From assembly GCA_002269645.1 (NCBI GenBank), contig NIVC01000323.1:248001-312000 (forward strand): a DNA stretch of 64,000 nucleotides, written 5' to 3'. Below are positions 14,079 through 32,252 of this stretch, one piece after another. Source of the DNA: Macrostomum lignano (Eukaryota). Positions within the stretch are counted from its first letter, which is position 1; the number at the start of each line of letters is the position of its first letter. Both the position numbers and the translations under genes were made by a program. Below the pieces are notes generated by a model. The model ran no database searches and was not told the origin of the DNA. It saw nothing but the letters and a program-made list of their open reading frames with translations.

Positions 14079-14476
14079 ATGCTACATCTACAAGCAGATA
14101 ACAGGCTCAGGTTGTCAATCGTGACTGCATGGCAAATAATTATAGTAATTAGCCTGGGGCGCCAGGCCGTCCAGAGTCAGGCCTCGATGGCAGCGTTGAA
14201 GCAGCCGCTGCCATACCGCCTGCTGTGTCTGCTGCCCAATCAGTCTAATTATCAGTTCGACATGCGGTACATCCTGCCGAGCCAGAGCCTGATCAACGCC
14301 GAGCTGACGAAGCGTGGCCTGGCAGACCAGTTCAGCATCAACATCAGCTTTGAGGCGTCCACCTGCTCCAACCTGGCAGCTGTGCCTGCGATGCAGTACT
14401 ATTATTCTGGCTGGGTTGACGGCTTTGTTGGCCTGCCGTGTCCCGAGAGCTGCAGCCAGGTGGTGCAGTACTCCAA
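14079..14476 (+). CDS. Receptor guanylyl cyclase variable cassette A, exon A1 (putative signal peptide + start of ANF-receptor ligand-binding domain)
   Basis: Hydrophobic N-terminus; LLCLLP; WVDGFVGLPC resembles the NPR hhGPxC motif; ends AA|gtgagt (phase 2). Confidence 0.8.
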
Positions 14477-14497
14477 GTGAGTCTGTTTATCTACCTT

Positions 14498-16456
14498 TTT
14501 TATCTATCTATCTATCTATCCGTCTATCTATCTATCTATCTATCTATCTGTCTATCTATCTATCTATCTATCTATCTATCTATCTATCTATCTATCCGTC
14601 TATCTATCTATCTATCTATCTATCTGTCTATCTATCTATCTATCTATCTATCTATCTATCTATCTATCTATCTATCTATCTATCTATCTATCTATCTATC
14701 TATCTATCTATCTATCTATCTATCTATCTATCTATCTATCTATCTATCTATCTATCTATCTATCTATCTATCTATCTATCTATCTATCTATCTATCTATC
14801 TATCTATCTATCTATCTATCTATCTATCTATCTATCTATCTATCTATCTATCTATCTATCTGATCTATCTATCTATCTATCTATCTATCTATCTATCTAT
14901 CTATCTATCTATCTATCTATCTATCTATCTATCTATCTCTCTATCTATCTATCTATCTATCTATCTATCTATCTATCTGTCTATCTATCTGTCTATCTAT
15001 CTATTTATCTATCTATCTATCTATCTATCTATCTCTCTATCTATCTATCTATCTATCTATCTATCTATCTGTCTATCTATCTATCTATCTATCTATCTAT
15101 CTATCTCTCTATCTATCTATCTATCTATCTATCTATCTATCTATCTATCTATCTATCTATCTATCTATCTATCTATCTATCTATCTATCTATCTATCTAT
15201 CTATCTATCTATCTATCTATCTATCTATCTATCTATCTATCTATCTATCTATCTATCTATCTATCTATCTATCTATCTATCTATCTATCTATCTATCTAT
15301 CTATCTATCTATCTATCTATCTATCTATCTATCTATCTATCTATCTATCTATCTATCTATCTATCTATCTATCTATCTATCTATCTATCTATCTATCTAT
15401 CTATCTATCTATCTATCTATCTATCTATCTATCTATCTATCTATCTATCTATCTATCTATCTATCTATCTATCTATCTATCTATCTATCTATCTATCTAT
15501 CTATCTCTCTATCTATCTATCTATCTATCTATCTATCTATCTGTCTATCTATCTATCTATCTATCTATCTATCTATCTATCTATCTATCTATCTATCTAT
15601 CTATCTATCTATCTATCTATCTATCTATCTATCTATCTATCTATCTATCTATCTATCTATCTATCTATCTATCTATCTATCTATCTATCTATCTATCTAT
15701 CTATCTATCTATCTATCTATCTATCTATCTATCTATCTATCTATCTATCTATCTCTCTATCTATCTATCTATCTATCTATCTATCTATCTGTCTATCTAT
15801 CTATCTATCTATCTATCTATCTATCTATCTATCTATCTATCTATCTATCTATCTATCTATCTATCTATCTATCTATCTATCTATCTATCTATCTATCTAT
15901 CTATCTATCTATCTATCTATCTATCTATCTATCTATCTATCTATCTATCTATCTATCTATCTATCTATCTATCTATCTATCTATCTATCTATCTATCTAT
16001 CTATCTATCTATCTATCTATCTCTCTATCTATCTATCTATCTATCTATCTATCTATCTGTCTATCTATCTATCTATCTATCTATCTATCTATCTATCTAT
16101 CTATCTATCTATCTATCTATCTATCTATCTATCTATCTATCTATCTATCTATCTATCTATCTATCTATCTATCTATCTATCTATCTATCTATCTATCTAT
16201 CTATCTATCTATCTATCTATCTATCTATCTATCTATCTATCTATCTATCTATCTATCTATCTCTCTATCTATCTATCTATCTATCTATCTATCTATCTGT
16301 CTATCTATCTATCTATCTATCTATCTATCTATCTATCTATCTATCTATCTATCTATCTATCTATCTATCTATCTATCTATCTATCTATCTATCTATCTAT
16401 CTATCTATCTATCTATCTATCTATCTATCTATCTATCTATCTATCTATCTATCTAT
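14498..16456. repeat. (CTAT)n microsatellite, about 2 kb, in intron A1
   Basis: Near-pure tetranucleotide run. Confidence 0.99.
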
Positions 16457-16759
16457 CGCCTTTTAATTGCTTACTGTGTTACAATTTTTATTATCAAAGA
16501 CTTAGGATCTGGTAATCTCTAGAGAGAACCAGGCTTTTGCACTTTTCTCTGCGTGCCAATTTTTGTATGAAAAATTACCTACATCAAACAAGTGTTAATT
16601 TAACGTAGGAATCCATTAAATTCATGATTAATTTGAGCTCTCAGCTTCTCTGCTTGACGACTTGAAATGAAACAGAAATCTGTTTTTTATTTTTGTTAAA
16701 AAATCTGTTTGCTTGACAGGGCTTGGTAAATTTGCTGGCTAATGATTAAAGTGTCATGG

Positions 16760-28869: not shown

Positions 28870-29610
28870 TGTCTGTCTTAGTGTCTGTCCTAGTGTCCGT
28901 CTCAGTGTCCGTCTCAGTGTGTGTCTTAGTGTGTATCTTAGTGTCTGCCTTAGTGTCTGTTTTGGTGTCTGTCTCGGTGTTTGTCTCAGTGTCGGTCTCA
29001 GTATCTGTCTCAATGTCTGTCTTAGTGTCTGTCTCAGTATCTGTCTCAATGTCTGTCTTAGTGTCTGTCTCAGTGTTTGTCTTAGTGTCTGTCTCAGTGT
29101 CTGTCTCAGTGTCTGTCTCAGAGTCTGTCTCAGTGTCTGTCTCAATGTCTGTCTCAGTGTCTGTCTCAGTGTCTGTCTTAGTGTCTGTCTCAGTGTCTGT
29201 CTTAGTGTCTGTCTCAGGGTCTGTCTCAGTGTCTGTCTCAGTGTCTGTCTCAGTGTCTGTCTCAGTGTCTGTCTCAGTGTCTGTCTCGGTGTTTGTCTCA
29301 GTGTCGGTCTCAGTATCTGTCTCAATGTCTGTCTTAGTGTCCGTCTCAGTGTTTGTCTTAGTGTCTGTCTCAGTGTCTGTCTCAGTGTCTGTCTCAGTGT
29401 CTGTCTCAGTGTCTGTCTCAGTGTCTGTCTCGGTGTTTGTCTCAGTGTCGGTCTCAGTATCTGTCTCAATGTCTGTCTTAGTGTCCGTCTCAGTGTTTGT
29501 CTTAGTGTCTGTCTCAGTGTCTGTCTTAGTGTCTGCCTCAGTGTCTGTCTCAGTGTCTGTCTCAGTGTCTGTCTCAGGGTCTGTCTCAGTGTCTGTCTCA
29601 GTGTCTGTCT
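28870..29610. repeat. 12-bp minisatellite (GTGTCTGTCTCA)
   Basis: Tandem units. Confidence 0.95.
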
Positions 29611-32140
29611 TAGAGTCCGCTTCGGGGCGCCCGAACTCGCCGCCCAAATATTTACTCCAGTGTTCAGCGGAAGCTGCAGCAGTCCTCAAAGTCCATTCCC
29701 AGCTATCGCCCTTACAAGCCGTAACTTCAAAAGAAGAAGAAGCACTTCTCAAACGCTCCCATTGGAATGATTCGATCTCCTGCCGAGCTCAAATAATAAG
29801 CTCATAATTGGTGCGGCGCCGAACCAGGCAAAGCTAAACTCGGTCTCCTTGCTCAGACTCCGGGAATAGAGGCCCTTACCGAGTGGAGCTGATCTATCCG
29901 ATATAGTAGTCCAGCCTCCGTGATGGAGTTTCACTCTCTGGACACAGCACCGGGTTCGGGCACCGAGACAAATTGGGGGCCGGTCCGCCGGCTCGGGCAA
30001 ACACTGGAGGACGAGAGGCAGAGAAATCCCTGGGGGTAGAGCTAGGGCAGCTCCACCCAGCTCGGCAACTCCGTCATGCAGTGACGGCAGCAACCGATGT
30101 GACAGAAAAAAAACAATAATACGTGACTCTCATATCTACTCACTGACTGTCAGCCCGGCTAGTTGACTTTCCTAGGCCCAATGAGAGATATCTTTGGAAA
30201 AGTATATTTTTATGCAAATTAATCTCTCGAAAATCCCACCGGCAGAGCGTCTAATTGAATCAGTTCGTTTGGGATTTTTTAATTCCCGGAAAAAGCGCGG
30301 GTCAACGATAGCGAGATGGCCGAGCAGTTTAGGGATCTTTTGGGTCAGAGTGAGGAGAGATGAAGAGAGTTCACGACTGGCTGCATCCAAGCCCCGATGA
30401 CATTCGGTCAGCGACTTCCACGAGTCTCGTAGAAATATTAATTGGGTTCTTTCAGAGTGTAGGAACTCAAGCCATCCAAAATTTATGAGCCTCTTGAAGG
30501 CGGTGCAAGAACTCGTCCGAACTATATTTTTAATCTGAAATCGGAATTCCATTTGCAAAGGGAAGAGAATTTCTGCAATTTTCGCCCACGCACTCAAATT
30601 CTGCATAGATTAGGCTTTATTCTCTTCAGGCTCAAATTCTTAAGCTGAGGCCGTCATGTTTACCTTTCGTGCCTTTCTCTGTATGTCAGGCCAGCATCTT
30701 TATAGGCATCCTCCATGCTTATTCTGCATCGTTTGCAATTAAATCGGGTTCTAAAGGCGAAAAACTACAGAAAAACTTGATACTATAAACACCGTGGCGC
30801 AATGGCCTTAGCGAAATCGTCCCACACTATGTCGTTATCCGTCATGTAATGTAAAACTTACATCGTTACTGTACGGGTTTACTCTAACAGCTGCAATTTT
30901 TAGAACTGGTCAGTTGAGTCAGACCAACGCTACACTTATTTCAAAAGAAACGAGACTTATCTAGAAAACTGTCTTCCGGCGCTTCCCCAATGTTATGATG
31001 CCGATTCGCGCTGTGTACGAGTATAGACAAGGACTTAACGAGTATCGTACCGGTTTTATGCCTTCCGGGCACAAGCAGGGGTCACCATGGCTTAGCCACT
31101 TTTTATGGCGATGGCGGTAAGGAAGGAAGACGGAGTTTTTAACAGCTCTACATGCAGTACATGTGCAGAGAGCTGATTTGGCTAGTAAAATCGGTATTGG
31201 CCGGGTTTGCAGCCGTGCGCGCTCCAGATAAAGTTCTGCATTTGCTGTTGTCCGCACGGCAAGGCCAATGCATTGACCATTTTGCCGTCCACTTTTAGGA
31301 TGTCCCCACGTCCTCTGTCACTAGCTCTCCACTGGTGTTGGCATGAATAATTTGTGCTTTAACTGCTGCAATGAGCTGCTCAGACTGCTTGCACTGCAGC
31401 TCAGTTGGGTTTAAAAAATGCAACCATCATGCCCACTGCCAGATGGTAATTTAATTGCCCCGACAGTCTGTGTGTGCCCTTAGCTACTACAGCGAATTTC
31501 CATTCGATATTCAAAAATTCTACGTCTCACTAAGTGCTCATAGTTTGCATAGCTGGTGATATACGACTGGGCTGACTGACTGACTGACTGGCTGTGTTGA
31601 TTCGTGCTGCACCATCAGTGGGTGAATATTGAGCATAGTACCTCTACTTGTAGTGTGAAGGCTAAGCTACCAAGCTGACATCGAGATAAGAACTCGAGTT
31701 CGGACCAATGCTTATTCAAAAGTACAAAGTCTGCATCAAAATTTACAACTTTATCATTCGATGCACTTTAAACTACGTAGGCTTTAAATTTGTGCAAGTT
31801 CCGGAAAAGGCTGCATTTCACTGAATTAGGATTGCCTCACCTTCTCAAGTTTGTGTGATTTAGTCCACGGTTGATTGCACTTTTGGTTCTTAAGCAAAGT
31901 TTCTGCGAAATGTCACCTGTTCCAGTCTCTCTTTTGTGTACTTTTTTGTAGCCCGAATTCGTCTATTTTTCGTAAATAATTTATTATTTTGAAACAATTT
32001 TCTCACGACAAATTTAAGGGTCAACAAAAGGAAAAACAAATTATTATCTCACTTTGTAATTATGACGTTTCTTTCAAAGTCGAACATCGTAATAACACAC
32101 TTACCGTCTCTACTGTATTTCTCTCCCCCCAACCCTTCAG

Positions 32141-32252
32141 TCGTGGTTCTCTGCGCGGACCCGGACACTGTTCGCGAGATCATGATCAAAGCTCAAGAGC
32201 TGGGCTTCATCAATGGAGAGTACGTTTTCTTTAACATCGACTTGTTCAGCAG
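32141..32252 (+). CDS. Receptor guanylyl cyclase constant exon C1
   Basis: cccttcag acceptor, phase 1; VVLCADPDTVREIMIKAQELGFINGEYVFFNIDLFS; ends AG|gtgagt. Confidence 0.93.

What the first reader, a model, noticed from the sequence alone, without database searches (positions are those of the whole stretch)
14079..32252. Variable-constant receptor guanylyl cyclase: two alternative ligand-binding N-terminal cassettes share one signalling body
Seen: two separate two-exon cassettes (A: 14079-14476 + 19440-19795; B: 23295-23613 + 25089-25511). Each has its own predicted leader and encodes about 250 aa of the ANF-receptor domain. Both end in phase 1 at the homologous position (KIGTDYS|V and RDEIR|L), matching the single acceptor at 32141 (VVLCADP). 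Summed CDS lengths are 3492 and 3480 nt, both in frame (1163 and 1159 aa). No constant exons for A were found between 19795 and 23295. Established: this architecture is known for clustered protocadherins and UGT1A, and in NPR-A the N-terminal extracellular region contributes to dimerisation and hormone binding. I know of no such design for receptor GCs. Inference: promoter choice switches peptide or chemosensory specificity, and A/B heterodimers are possible.
Basis: partly seen in the sequence, partly recalled or inferred. Interest (0 to 1): 0.85.

Follow-up and report, generated by a model that had tools for sequence, protein, structure and literature searches.

The report
Receptor guanylyl cyclase with swappable N-termini
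This flatworm (Macrostomum lignano) gene for a hormone-receptor-type guanylyl cyclase carries several alternative "front halves" of its ligand-binding domain in a row upstream of one shared signalling body, a design that also appears in mollusc and ribbon-worm orthologues but that I could not find described in the literature I searched.

Summary
Cassettes A (14079-14476 + 19440-19795) and B (23295-23613 + 25089-25511) have canonical splice sites. Each starts with an ATG and a signal peptide, encodes the first half of an ANF_receptor domain, and ends in a phase-1 donor that fits the single acceptor at 32141. Nine constant exons (32141-42633) complete CDSs of 3492 and 3480 nt.

The window is Macrostomum lignano. 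A near-identical copy of the locus shows two more cassettes (Y, X) upstream of the window. Three paralogous loci keep the order Y-X-A-B-body. The GenBank models, which come from an RNA-seq-based annotation, join X or Y directly to the constant exon and skip A and B. UniProt models join B to it.

A is known only as truncated read-through models, so the A-to-body junction is inferred. The support is indirect: intact ORFs and splice phases in three paralogues, dN/dS of 0.15-0.25 (the same as B), and one continuous Pfam domain match when A is joined to the body.

RefSeq isoforms of mollusc and nemertean orthologues switch N-termini at exactly the same residue. C. elegans gcy-28 has isoform-specific promoters. 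Promoter choice and ligand switching remain untested.

The parts
14079..14476 (+). Cassette A, exon 1: ATG, signal peptide and the start of the ANF_receptor domain; phase-2 GT donor
   Evidence: 100% match to UniProt model P0001 from M36 onward. Homologous exons with their own ATG and signal peptide occur in L001, L002 and L003.
19440..19795 (+). Cassette A, exon 2: ends ...KIGTDYS + 1 nt | GTAAAA (phase-1 donor)
   Evidence: Against the L001 copy it shows 5 synonymous and 0 nonsynonymous differences. Paralogue dN/dS is 0.15-0.25. The read-through tails after the donor are not conserved between paralogues.
23295..23613 (+). Cassette B, exon 1: ATG, signal peptide and the start of the ANF_receptor domain; phase-1 donor
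   Evidence: UniProt model P0005 uses it from an internal Met.
25089..25511 (+). Cassette B, exon 2: ends ...RDEIR + 1 nt | GTAAGA (phase-1 donor). This is the canonical-type cassette.
   Evidence: P0005 joins it to VVLCADP. In the NJ tree it groups with the cestode N-termini and lies near the mollusc/arthropod canonical clade whose '...ARI/V' ending it shares.
32141..32252 (+). Constant exon C1: single phase-1 acceptor (ttcag|TCGTGG), begins (V/L)VVLCADP
   Evidence: Identical in L001. This is the point at which isoforms of mollusc and nemertean orthologues become identical.
33267..33829 (+). Constant exon C2: the rest of the ANF_receptor domain (with C1, Pfam profile 181-352)
34427..35175 (+). 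Constant exon C3: transmembrane helix (34438-34509), juxtamembrane insert and the start of the kinase-homology domain
36081..36249 (+). Constant exon C4 (kinase-homology domain)
38914..39072 (+). Constant exon C5 (kinase-homology domain)
40451..40911 (+). Constant exon C6 (end of the kinase-homology domain, the segment linking it to the cyclase domain, and the start of the cyclase domain)
41321..41564 (+). Constant exon C7 (guanylate cyclase catalytic domain)
42264..42454 (+). Constant exon C8 (guanylate cyclase catalytic domain)
42544..42633 (+). Constant exon C9 with the stop codon

Best explanation
The window holds the two body-proximal members (A and B) of an array of at least four alternative 5' cassettes (Y, X, A, B), plus all nine constant exons, of a Macrostomum lignano receptor guanylyl cyclase of the NPR-A/GCY-28 type.

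Each cassette carries its own ATG and signal peptide. It encodes roughly the first half of the ligand-binding (ANF_receptor) domain, up to a point that aligns with NPR-A residue ~209. Each ends in a phase-1 GT donor. The single phase-1 acceptor at 32141 starts the shared remainder: the second half of the ligand-binding domain, the transmembrane helix, the kinase-homology domain and the cyclase.

One cassette per mRNA is joined to C1, and any cassettes lying between it and C1 are removed as intron. The cassette is most likely chosen by where transcription starts. The products share one signalling body but differ in the N-terminal half of the extracellular domain. From my memory of the NPR-A structures, that half carries much of the dimer interface and hormone pocket.

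Shown: the exon anatomy and phases; conservation of cassette order and ORFs in paralogues; X->C1 and Y->C1 in GenBank models that come from an RNA-seq-based annotation; B->C1 in UniProt models; and the same switch point in isoforms from other phyla.

Inferred: A->C1 splicing, one promoter per cassette, and different ligand or dimer specificity.
For: Anatomy and phases.

Every cassette in every locus has an ATG and a signal peptide and a phase-1 GTRAG-like donor.

A joined to the constant part gives one continuous ANF_receptor match (profile 18-352, 151.8 bits). A alone covers profile 18-144 and the constant part starts at 181.

The cassette order Y-X-A-B-C1 is conserved in L001, L002 and L003; L004 has Y-B-C1.

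GenBank models P0004, P0007 and P0009 (X->C1) and P0010 (Y->C1) skip A and B. That annotation is built from RNA-seq with StringTie/TACO, using an isoform-fraction filter of 0.75; I infer that this filter is why each locus shows only one isoform (PMC5730564).

UniProt P0005, P0006 and P0008 join B->C1.

A is under purifying selection. Between paralogues dN/dS is 0.15-0.25, equal to B. A2 shows 5 synonymous and 0 nonsynonymous differences against the near-identical copy. Intron positions are conserved. The read-through tails after A's donor are unrelated in sequence and length between paralogues.

Orthologues in nine mollusc genera and the nemertean Lineus have isoforms that are identical over 840-893 C-terminal residues and differ before x|VVLCAS. 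Logan contigs L005 and L006 carry uninterrupted ORFs that join an '...IGxxY..'-type N-terminus to the body.
Against: No record shows the 19795->32141 junction. The only public models of A (P0001, P0002) read through the donor and stop.

In the L001 copy, A1 has a 1-nt deletion in a CCC run. The four amino-acid differences read off between the two A1 copies (of five base substitutions) are all nonsynonymous. A may therefore be decaying in at least one copy, or that assembly may have an indel error.

A, B and Y are two-exon cassettes, so their second exons carry real acceptors. B2's acceptor is phase-compatible with the X and A2 donors (my reading of the exon lengths). The simple cap-proximal-donor rule I recall for protocadherins therefore does not by itself explain how they are skipped.

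UniProt model P0124 chains X into A1.

I found no conserved TATA-like motif upstream of the cassettes.
Confidence: 0.75

Rival explanations
1. Cassette A is an orphan. It is either a decaying relic of a partial duplication or a separate small gene that makes a ~250-aa secreted half-domain, as the UniProt models P0001 and P0002 imply. On this reading only X, Y and B are real alternative N-termini.
For: P0001 and P0002 are the only public models of A, and both stop after reading through the donor. L001 has a frameshifting 1-nt deletion in A1, and the four amino-acid differences read off between the two A1 copies are all nonsynonymous.
Against: A has an intact ORF, a conserved internal intron and a phase-1 terminal donor in three loci whose bodies are only 74-76% identical. 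Its dN/dS of 0.15-0.25 is the same as B's. A2 shows 5 synonymous and 0 nonsynonymous differences. The read-through tails are not conserved. A alone is half of a Pfam domain and completes it only when joined to C1. The deletion lies in a homopolymer of a long-read assembly (my recollection of how Mlig_3_7 was sequenced).
Confidence: 0.12
2. There is one distal promoter and the cassettes are mutually exclusive internal units, as in Dscam, or they are sometimes concatenated. They would not be alternative first exons with their own promoters.
For: Two-exon cassettes contain acceptors. UniProt model P0124 splices X into A1 in frame. Predicted proteins in Bulinus and Batillaria chain two cassettes.
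Against: Every cassette keeps its own ATG and signal peptide in every paralogue. These would be useless or harmful internally. I found no docking/selector-type complementarity between the sequence downstream of the cassette donors and the sequence upstream of C1 (limited test). The chained models come from gene-model sets rather than RefSeq, and in P0139 the second unit starts part-way into a cassette, so I suspect they are prediction artefacts. C. elegans gcy-28.c and gcy-28.d are driven by separate promoter fragments with different expression patterns (PMC9249223).
Confidence: 0.08
3. Cassettes and body are transcribed separately and joined by trans-splicing of two pre-mRNAs.
For: M. lignano has an active SL trans-splicing system; 38.8% of its genes are trans-spliced (PMC5730564). 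Trans-splicing adds diversity in chelicerate sDscam (abstract of PMC9258826, listed).
Against: Cassettes and body are collinear, on the same strand and in a conserved order in all four loci. Cis-splicing is the simpler reading. Nothing in the sequence calls for trans-splicing.
Confidence: 0.04
4. The arrangement is an assembly artefact, with collapsed or mis-joined paralogues.
For: The genome is highly repetitive and partly duplicated (PMC5730564). The introns here are mostly tandem repeats.
Against: The same order A-B-C1 appears in a separately assembled, 93-97% identical contig (L001) and in three diverged paralogous loci.
Confidence: 0.01

Closest known systems
Orthologous 'atrial natriuretic peptide receptor 1-like / gcy-28-like' genes of molluscs (Mytilus, Mercenaria, Mya, Haliotis, Crassostrea/Magallana, Ostrea, Saccostrea, Argopecten, Biomphalaria) and the nemertean Lineus, as annotated in RefSeq
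   Same: The body is 55-64% identical. Isoforms of one gene share an identical 840-893 aa C-terminus and differ in the first ~225-265 aa. The switch falls at the homologous residue before VVLCAS/VVLCADP. There are two classes of cassette ending, '...ARI|' (like B) and '...(I/V)GxxY(S/G/A)V|' (like A and X). Orphan ~250-aa models truncated at the same donor occur in the gastropods Elysia, Bulinus and Batillaria.
   Different: I know these only from annotation and found no paper that describes them. Orthology of A, X and Y to particular mollusc cassette types is unresolved (long branches). The Haliotis gene spans 320 kb, against ~67 kb here.
C. elegans gcy-28 (isoforms c and d)
   Same: It is a receptor GC to which this family is likened: RefSeq names a Haliotis orthologue 'gcy-28-like'. 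Its isoforms have different ATG-containing 5' ends, the same 3' end, and separate promoter fragments that give broad versus AIA-restricted expression (PMC9249223; PMC3842693).
   Different: I could not retrieve the protein isoforms. I therefore do not know whether they diverge at the homologous VVLCA junction or how much of the extracellular domain differs.
Clustered protocadherins and UGT1A (variable first exons plus constant exons)
   Same: There is a tandem array of homologous 5' units, each with its own start codon, all ending in the same phase and sharing one first constant acceptor. The variable part is the recognition half and the constant part is the signalling or catalytic half (my knowledge of those loci, compared).
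   Different: In those loci each variable unit is, as I recall, a single exon without an acceptor. Here A, B and Y are two-exon units. There are only about four units here. The junction cuts through the middle of one folded domain rather than between domains. A promoter per unit has not been shown here.
Chelicerate shortened Dscam (sDscam)
   Same: It is an invertebrate receptor family in which tandem 5' cassettes with alternative promoters are joined to constant exons (abstracts of PMC9258826 and PMC5775551, listed).
   Different: It is an Ig-superfamily adhesion receptor with 50-100 cassettes, unrelated in sequence and function.
Vertebrate NPR-A (NPR1) extracellular domain, PDB 1dp4/8tg9
   Same: The B-isoform extracellular domain aligns end to end with it (E=1e-57 to 1e-58; query 34-472 against chain 4-434). 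The domain order is the same.
   Different: As far as I know NPR-A has a single N-terminus. The cassette/constant junction here maps to about V209/I210, just before C213.

Membership tests
Receptor (membrane) guanylyl cyclase, NPR-A/GCY-28 type | Extracellular ANF_receptor (periplasmic-binding-protein-like) ligand-binding domain | tested here: met
   PF01094: A+constant E=3.4e-44 (profile 18-352); B+constant E=1.7e-47. End-to-end alignment to the NPR-A extracellular domain.
Receptor (membrane) guanylyl cyclase, NPR-A/GCY-28 type | Single transmembrane helix followed by a kinase-homology domain | tested here: met
   Hydrophobic stretch VATYAVVVLLVLICVLSVVIAVIY at 34438-34509, read directly (no TM predictor was run). 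PF07714 E=1.3e-39 and PF00069 E=7.5e-32.
Receptor (membrane) guanylyl cyclase, NPR-A/GCY-28 type | C-terminal class III cyclase catalytic domain | tested here: met
   PF00211 E=1.8e-69, profile 2-183/183. Enzyme activity was not tested. This copy has N where H is nearly invariant (RIGINSG, 41558-41560).
Variable-constant gene (clustered alternative 5' units, protocadherin/UGT1A type) | Tandem array of homologous variable units upstream of one set of constant exons | tested here: met
   A and B lie in the window. Y and X lie upstream in the near-identical copy L001. The order is conserved in L002 and L003.
Variable-constant gene (clustered alternative 5' units, protocadherin/UGT1A type) | Each unit has its own translation start and leader | tested here: met
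   An ATG plus a hydrophobic signal-peptide-like leader is present for every cassette in every locus.
Variable-constant gene (clustered alternative 5' units, protocadherin/UGT1A type) | Every unit's terminal donor has the same phase and is spliced to the one first constant acceptor | tested here: inconclusive
   The phase-1 donor and single phase-1 acceptor are confirmed for all units. The junction appears in annotated models for X, Y and B but in none for A.
Variable-constant gene (clustered alternative 5' units, protocadherin/UGT1A type) | Each unit has its own promoter | not testable with these tools
   No conserved core-promoter motif was found. This needs RAMPAGE, CAGE or reporter data. 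There is indirect support from gcy-28.c and gcy-28.d promoter fragments in C. elegans.
Variable-constant gene (clustered alternative 5' units, protocadherin/UGT1A type) | Variable units are single exons with no 3' splice acceptor, so downstream units are skipped automatically | tested here: not met
   X is a single exon. A, B and Y have two exons with an internal AG acceptor. B2's acceptor is phase-compatible with the X and A2 donors.
gcy-28-type alternative-promoter isoforms (C. elegans) | Isoforms diverge at the homologous point inside the extracellular domain | not tested
   Only the primer and promoter information from PMC9249223 was available. I could not fetch the protein isoforms.

The most novel reading that the evidence does not exclude
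A multi-cassette 'half-domain swap' locus is an ancient feature of the NPR-A/GCY-28-like receptor guanylyl cyclase, dating back at least to the spiralian ancestor and possibly to the protostome ancestor. One gene would make four or more receptors with different ligand pockets and dimer interfaces on the same cyclase. Because these receptors are dimers, mixed pairs would multiply the specificities. Because most cassettes have two exons, choosing one would need a skipping mechanism beyond the cap-proximal rule used by protocadherins.
Probability: 0.4. Interest if true: 0.75.

Novelty: new member of a known kind. Interest (0 to 1): 0.6.

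Why it matters
Invertebrate NPR-like receptor cyclases are, to my knowledge, mostly orphans. If one gene offers several ligand-binding front halves, then 'the ligand of this receptor' is the wrong question: each cassette should be de-orphanised and mapped to cell types separately. 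Gene counts would also understate receptor diversity.

The locus is also a rare case in which the variable/constant boundary runs through the middle of a single folded domain. Every cassette therefore has to stay structurally compatible with the same second half, which makes it a natural experiment in domain modularity.

There is a practical point for annotation. Pipelines often report these cassettes as separate ~250-aa 'ANF_receptor domain-containing proteins' (M. lignano P0001 and P0002; Elysia, Bulinus and Batillaria models), or keep only one isoform per locus.

Tried and rejected
(1) Word-indexed protein searches with A alone and with B alone returned no full-length protein. even missed P0005, which contains B at 100% identity. 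Absence from those searches is therefore weak evidence, and I did not use it against A->C1.

I have no structure model.

(3) I looked for a conserved TATA box upstream of the cassettes. TATAAAAG lies 28 nt before B's ATG in the window, but it is TCTAAAAG in the near-identical copy and absent in the paralogues. I rejected it as promoter evidence.

(4) I looked for docking/selector RNA pairing between the 400 nt after each cassette donor and the 500 nt before C1. The longest exact complementary runs were 8-11 nt and no better than shuffles. A ViennaRNA duplex version of the test failed to run.

(5) I tested whether a conserved disulfide links cassette and body. The Cys that aligns near NPR-A C164 (C164-C213 is my recollection of the NPR-A disulfide) is present in window A, window B, X and Y, but missing in the A paralogue P0002 and in the B paralogues P0006 and P0008. 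I dropped this argument.

(6) P0125, P0126 and P0127 looked like possible A transcripts. P0125 and P0126 are frameshifted models whose tails do not match C1. P0127 (L007) looks genomic, from another species (its run's organism is not given), and has a different intron position. None is informative about the junction.

(7) Fetching a mollusc locus to map its cassettes failed. Two isoforms were not on record, and the Haliotis gene (320 kb) was too long to return DNA.

(8) The NJ tree of cassettes did not resolve whether A, X and Y are orthologous to specific mollusc cassette types.

(9) Nine full-text searches found no paper describing this architecture in receptor GCs. Tsunozaki 2008, Shinkai 2011 and Ortiz 2006 are not held.

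Full report
**What the window is.** Cassette A matches a UniProt Macrostomum lignano protein at 100% identity. The match includes 34 residues translated from the intron after the donor at 19795, so the window is M. lignano DNA. The constant part is 98-99% identical to two M. lignano guanylate cyclases, P0004 and P0005.

**Check of the observation.** The four cassette exons and the acceptor at 32141 have canonical AG/GT boundaries at the stated coordinates.
- A totals 754 nt and B totals 742 nt. Both leave one extra base (phase 1), and 32141 is a phase-1 acceptor.
- Guided by P0004 and P0005, I placed nine constant exons: 32141-32252, 33267-33829, 34427-35175, 36081-36249, 38914-39072, 40451-40911, 41321-41564, 42264-42454 and 42544-42633. 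They sum to 2738 nt.
- A and B each pass Pfam's threshold for ANF_receptor but cover only the N-terminal part of the profile. They are 25% identical to each other.
- The constant part carries profile positions 181-352 of the same domain, then a kinase-homology domain and a cyclase domain.
- No body exon lies between 19795 and 23295, and the window holds no further cassette.

**The locus is larger than the window.** P0004 (GenBank BOX15_Mlig000254g5) has the same body but a third N-terminus, which I call X. X is absent from the window.
- The contig encoding P0004 (L001, NIVC01001747.1) is 93-97% identical to the window over the shared region.
- On L001 the order is: a Y-type exon (6322-6786), X as a single exon (10001-10768), about 14 kb of a 15-bp tandem repeat, A, B, C1. 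The start of the window lies at the end of that tandem repeat.
- The GenBank model joins X to C1 across 55 kb, skipping A and B.
- The Y-type exon in L001 has an intact ORF and a phase-1 T|GTGAGT donor like that of P0010.

**Paralogous loci keep the same layout.** tblastn of all cassette types on three further M. lignano loci gives:

| Locus | Layout |
|---|---|
| L002 | Y-X-A-B-C1 |
| L003 | Y-X-A-B-C1 |
| L004 | Y-B-C1 |

- The bodies are 76%, 74% and 66% identical to the window's.
- GenBank models use X->C1 in L002 and L003 and Y->C1 in L004. UniProt models use B->C1 (P0006, P0008). These share their body with the X models of the same locus, exactly in L002 (896-residue common suffix) and with isolated differences in L003.
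- Every cassette in every locus starts with an ATG and a hydrophobic leader and ends with one extra base followed by GT(A/G)AG-like sequence.
- The internal intron of A (after ...VVQYS, phase 2) and of B (after ...DLMLG, phase 1) sits at the same place in all loci, and each reconstruction is an open frame.

**How good the transcript evidence is.** The GenBank annotation of this assembly was built from RNA-seq with STAR, StringTie and TACO plus a de novo transcriptome and TransDecoder (PMC5730564).
- The X->C1 and Y->C1 joins across very long introns therefore come from a read-based annotation rather than ab initio prediction. I could not inspect the reads for these particular junctions.
- TACO was run with an isoform-fraction filter of 0.75, and alternative transcripts were pruned for submission. 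I infer that this is why each locus shows a single isoform.
- The same paper reports 180 Mb of blocks that are at least 95% identical. That accounts for the window/L001 pair.

**Is A used?** No record shows 19795->32141. The public models of A (P0001, P0002) read through the donor and stop. The case for A is indirect but consistent.
- Between paralogues A has dN 0.40-0.48 with saturated dS, giving dN/dS 0.15-0.25. B gives 0.13-0.37.
- Between the window and L001, A2 has five differences, all synonymous. B2 has four and C2 has six, also all synonymous.
- The read-through tails are unrelated in the three loci: GKRNRF... (34 aa), GKNE... (21 aa) and GEVSRL (6 aa). What is conserved is the donor, not a C-terminus.
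- A alone is half a domain. Joined to C1 and C2 it gives one uninterrupted ANF_receptor alignment (profile 18-352, 151.8 bits).

Some evidence points the other way.
- L001 has a 1-nt deletion in a CCC run near the end of A1 (window 14442-14444).
- The four amino-acid differences read off between the two A1 copies (of five base substitutions) are all nonsynonymous, and two of them fall in the leader.
- This is either decay of A in that copy or a homopolymer error in a long-read assembly.

**The design is not confined to this species.** The nearest proteins outside M. lignano are mollusc, brachiopod, annelid and nemertean 'atrial natriuretic peptide receptor 1-like' or 'gcy-28-like' proteins, many with numerous RefSeq isoforms.
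- Within a species, isoforms share an identical C-terminal 840-893 residues and differ only before it.
- The point of divergence is the residue before VVLCAS, homologous to 32141.
- Cassette endings fall into two classes: '...ARI|', like B, and '...(I/V)GxxY(S/G/A)V|', like A (KIGTDYSV) and X (RVGNKLAV).
- In a rough NJ tree the first class forms a canonical clade that also includes arthropods. B sits beside the cestode N-termini, just outside that clade. The mollusc second class splits into several multi-species groups, one of which contains the nemertean Lineus. A, X and Y sit on long unresolved branches.
- Two contigs assembled from sequencing runs (L005, L006) carry uninterrupted 3.4-3.7 kb ORFs that join a second-class N-terminus to the body. 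At least some such junctions are therefore continuous in an intron-free assembled contig, most simply an mRNA.
- An exhaustive HMMER search with P0001 found many ~240-300 aa proteins ending '...IGxxY(A/S)G' plus a few read-through residues, some with two cassettes chained. Named examples are from the gastropods Elysia, Bulinus and Batillaria. This is the same annotation artefact as P0001.
- The Haliotis rubra orthologue spans 320 kb.
- In C. elegans, gcy-28.c and gcy-28.d are cloned with different ATG primers and one reverse primer. Separate 3.2- and 2.9-kb promoter fragments drive them, one broadly and one in AIA neurons (PMC9249223; PMC3842693). I could not check whether those isoforms diverge at the same residue.

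**Where the junction falls in the protein.** The B-isoform extracellular domain aligns end to end with rat and human NPR-A (E about 1e-58). The junction maps to about V209/I210, four residues before C213.
- Each cassette therefore supplies roughly the first 209 mature residues.
- From my memory of the NPR-A structures, this region includes the first segments of both lobes and many dimer-interface and hormone-contact residues. I did not test this here.
- The cassettes evolve about three times faster than the constant half of the same domain (dN 0.48-0.51 against 0.16 for window versus L002).

**Mechanism, and what remains open.** The simplest model is one transcription start per cassette, with that cassette's terminal donor joined to C1.
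- Two things do not fit the protocadherin rule. A, B and Y have internal acceptors. B2's acceptor is in phase with the X and A2 donors, so X->B2 would be in frame.
- Each internal acceptor probably pairs with the nearby donor of its own first exon, after which the fused unit is removed with the large intron. This is inference.
- I found no conserved promoter motif and no docking/selector complementarity.
- UniProt model P0124 chains X into A1. I treat it as a probable gene-prediction artefact, but I cannot exclude a real minor splice.

**Novelty.** Nine full-text searches found no description of this architecture for receptor guanylyl cyclases. Coverage of subscription journals is poor. The kind of architecture is well known (protocadherins, UGT1A, sDscam). 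Alternative-promoter isoforms of gcy-28 are also known, and the mollusc isoforms already sit in RefSeq. I therefore rate this a new member of a known kind. The new points are the conserved multi-cassette array, the switch point inside a single domain, and its spread across at least three phyla.

Noticed in passing
window 1-855 (and L001:21188-35044): A 15-bp tandem repeat (GATTCTATCTTGGGT, 57 copies) runs off the left end of the window. In the near-identical copy the same repeat fills about 14 kb between cassettes X and A.
   Followed up: partly
window 4273-7872 (-): A non-LTR retrotransposon. An 819-aa ORF carries RVT_1 and RNase_H, preceded by a 338-aa ORF with an endonuclease (Exo_endo_phos_2) domain. 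It lies in what would be the intron between X and A. A 299-aa ORF with no Pfam match lies just upstream of them on that strand (8087-8983).
   Followed up: partly
window 12455-13363, 14501-16457, 16894-17616, 18425-19169, 19994-20502, 21016-21797, 22270-22936, 23715-25071, 25562-27293, 28870-29610, 36552-36928, 39089-39461, 41674-42163: Most of the intronic space in the gene is micro- and minisatellite arrays, for example (TATC)489 directly after the A1 donor and a 23/140-bp array directly after the B2 donor. I do not know whether these arrays next to the donors affect splicing.
   Followed up: no
window 41558-41560: This copy has Asn in the cyclase motif RIGI(H/N)SGP. P0004, P0005 and more than 90% of the aligned homologues have His; P0010 also has Asn. 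The other copy (P0004) has Cys at a nearly invariant Trp (TYWLHGE). Each recent duplicate thus carries one change at a conserved site.
   Followed up: no
window 14442-14444 vs L001 ~50976: The L001 copy has CC where the window has CCC. This shifts the last ~8 codons of A1 out of frame. It is either a real inactivation of A in one copy or a homopolymer assembly error.
   Followed up: partly
L003:9219-9332, 9980-11044, ~17705-17995 (UniProt A0A1I8F652 = P0124): A gene model joins a 5' exon, cassette X and then cassette A1 through an acceptor inside A1's leader region, in frame. It then reads through A1's donor. It could be a prediction artefact or a real X->A1 splice.
   Followed up: partly
window 49049-49924 (+): A fragment of a reverse-transcriptase ORF (RVT_1, E=1.3e-6, just under Pfam's cut-off) lies downstream of the cyclase gene.
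   Followed up: no
window 59924-61657 (-): A 578-aa ORF with a weak Mab-21 C-terminal domain match (E=1.3e-5) and a long poly-Asp run. It may be a separate single-exon gene.
   Followed up: no
window 62734-63999 (-): An ankyrin-repeat ORF (Ank_2, E=3e-49) with near-identical internal repeats runs off the right end of the window.
   Followed up: no
L002:1786-2154: The Y-type exon of the L002 paralogue has in-frame stops near its 3' end, unlike those of L001, L003 and L004. That cassette may be dead in that locus.
   Followed up: no
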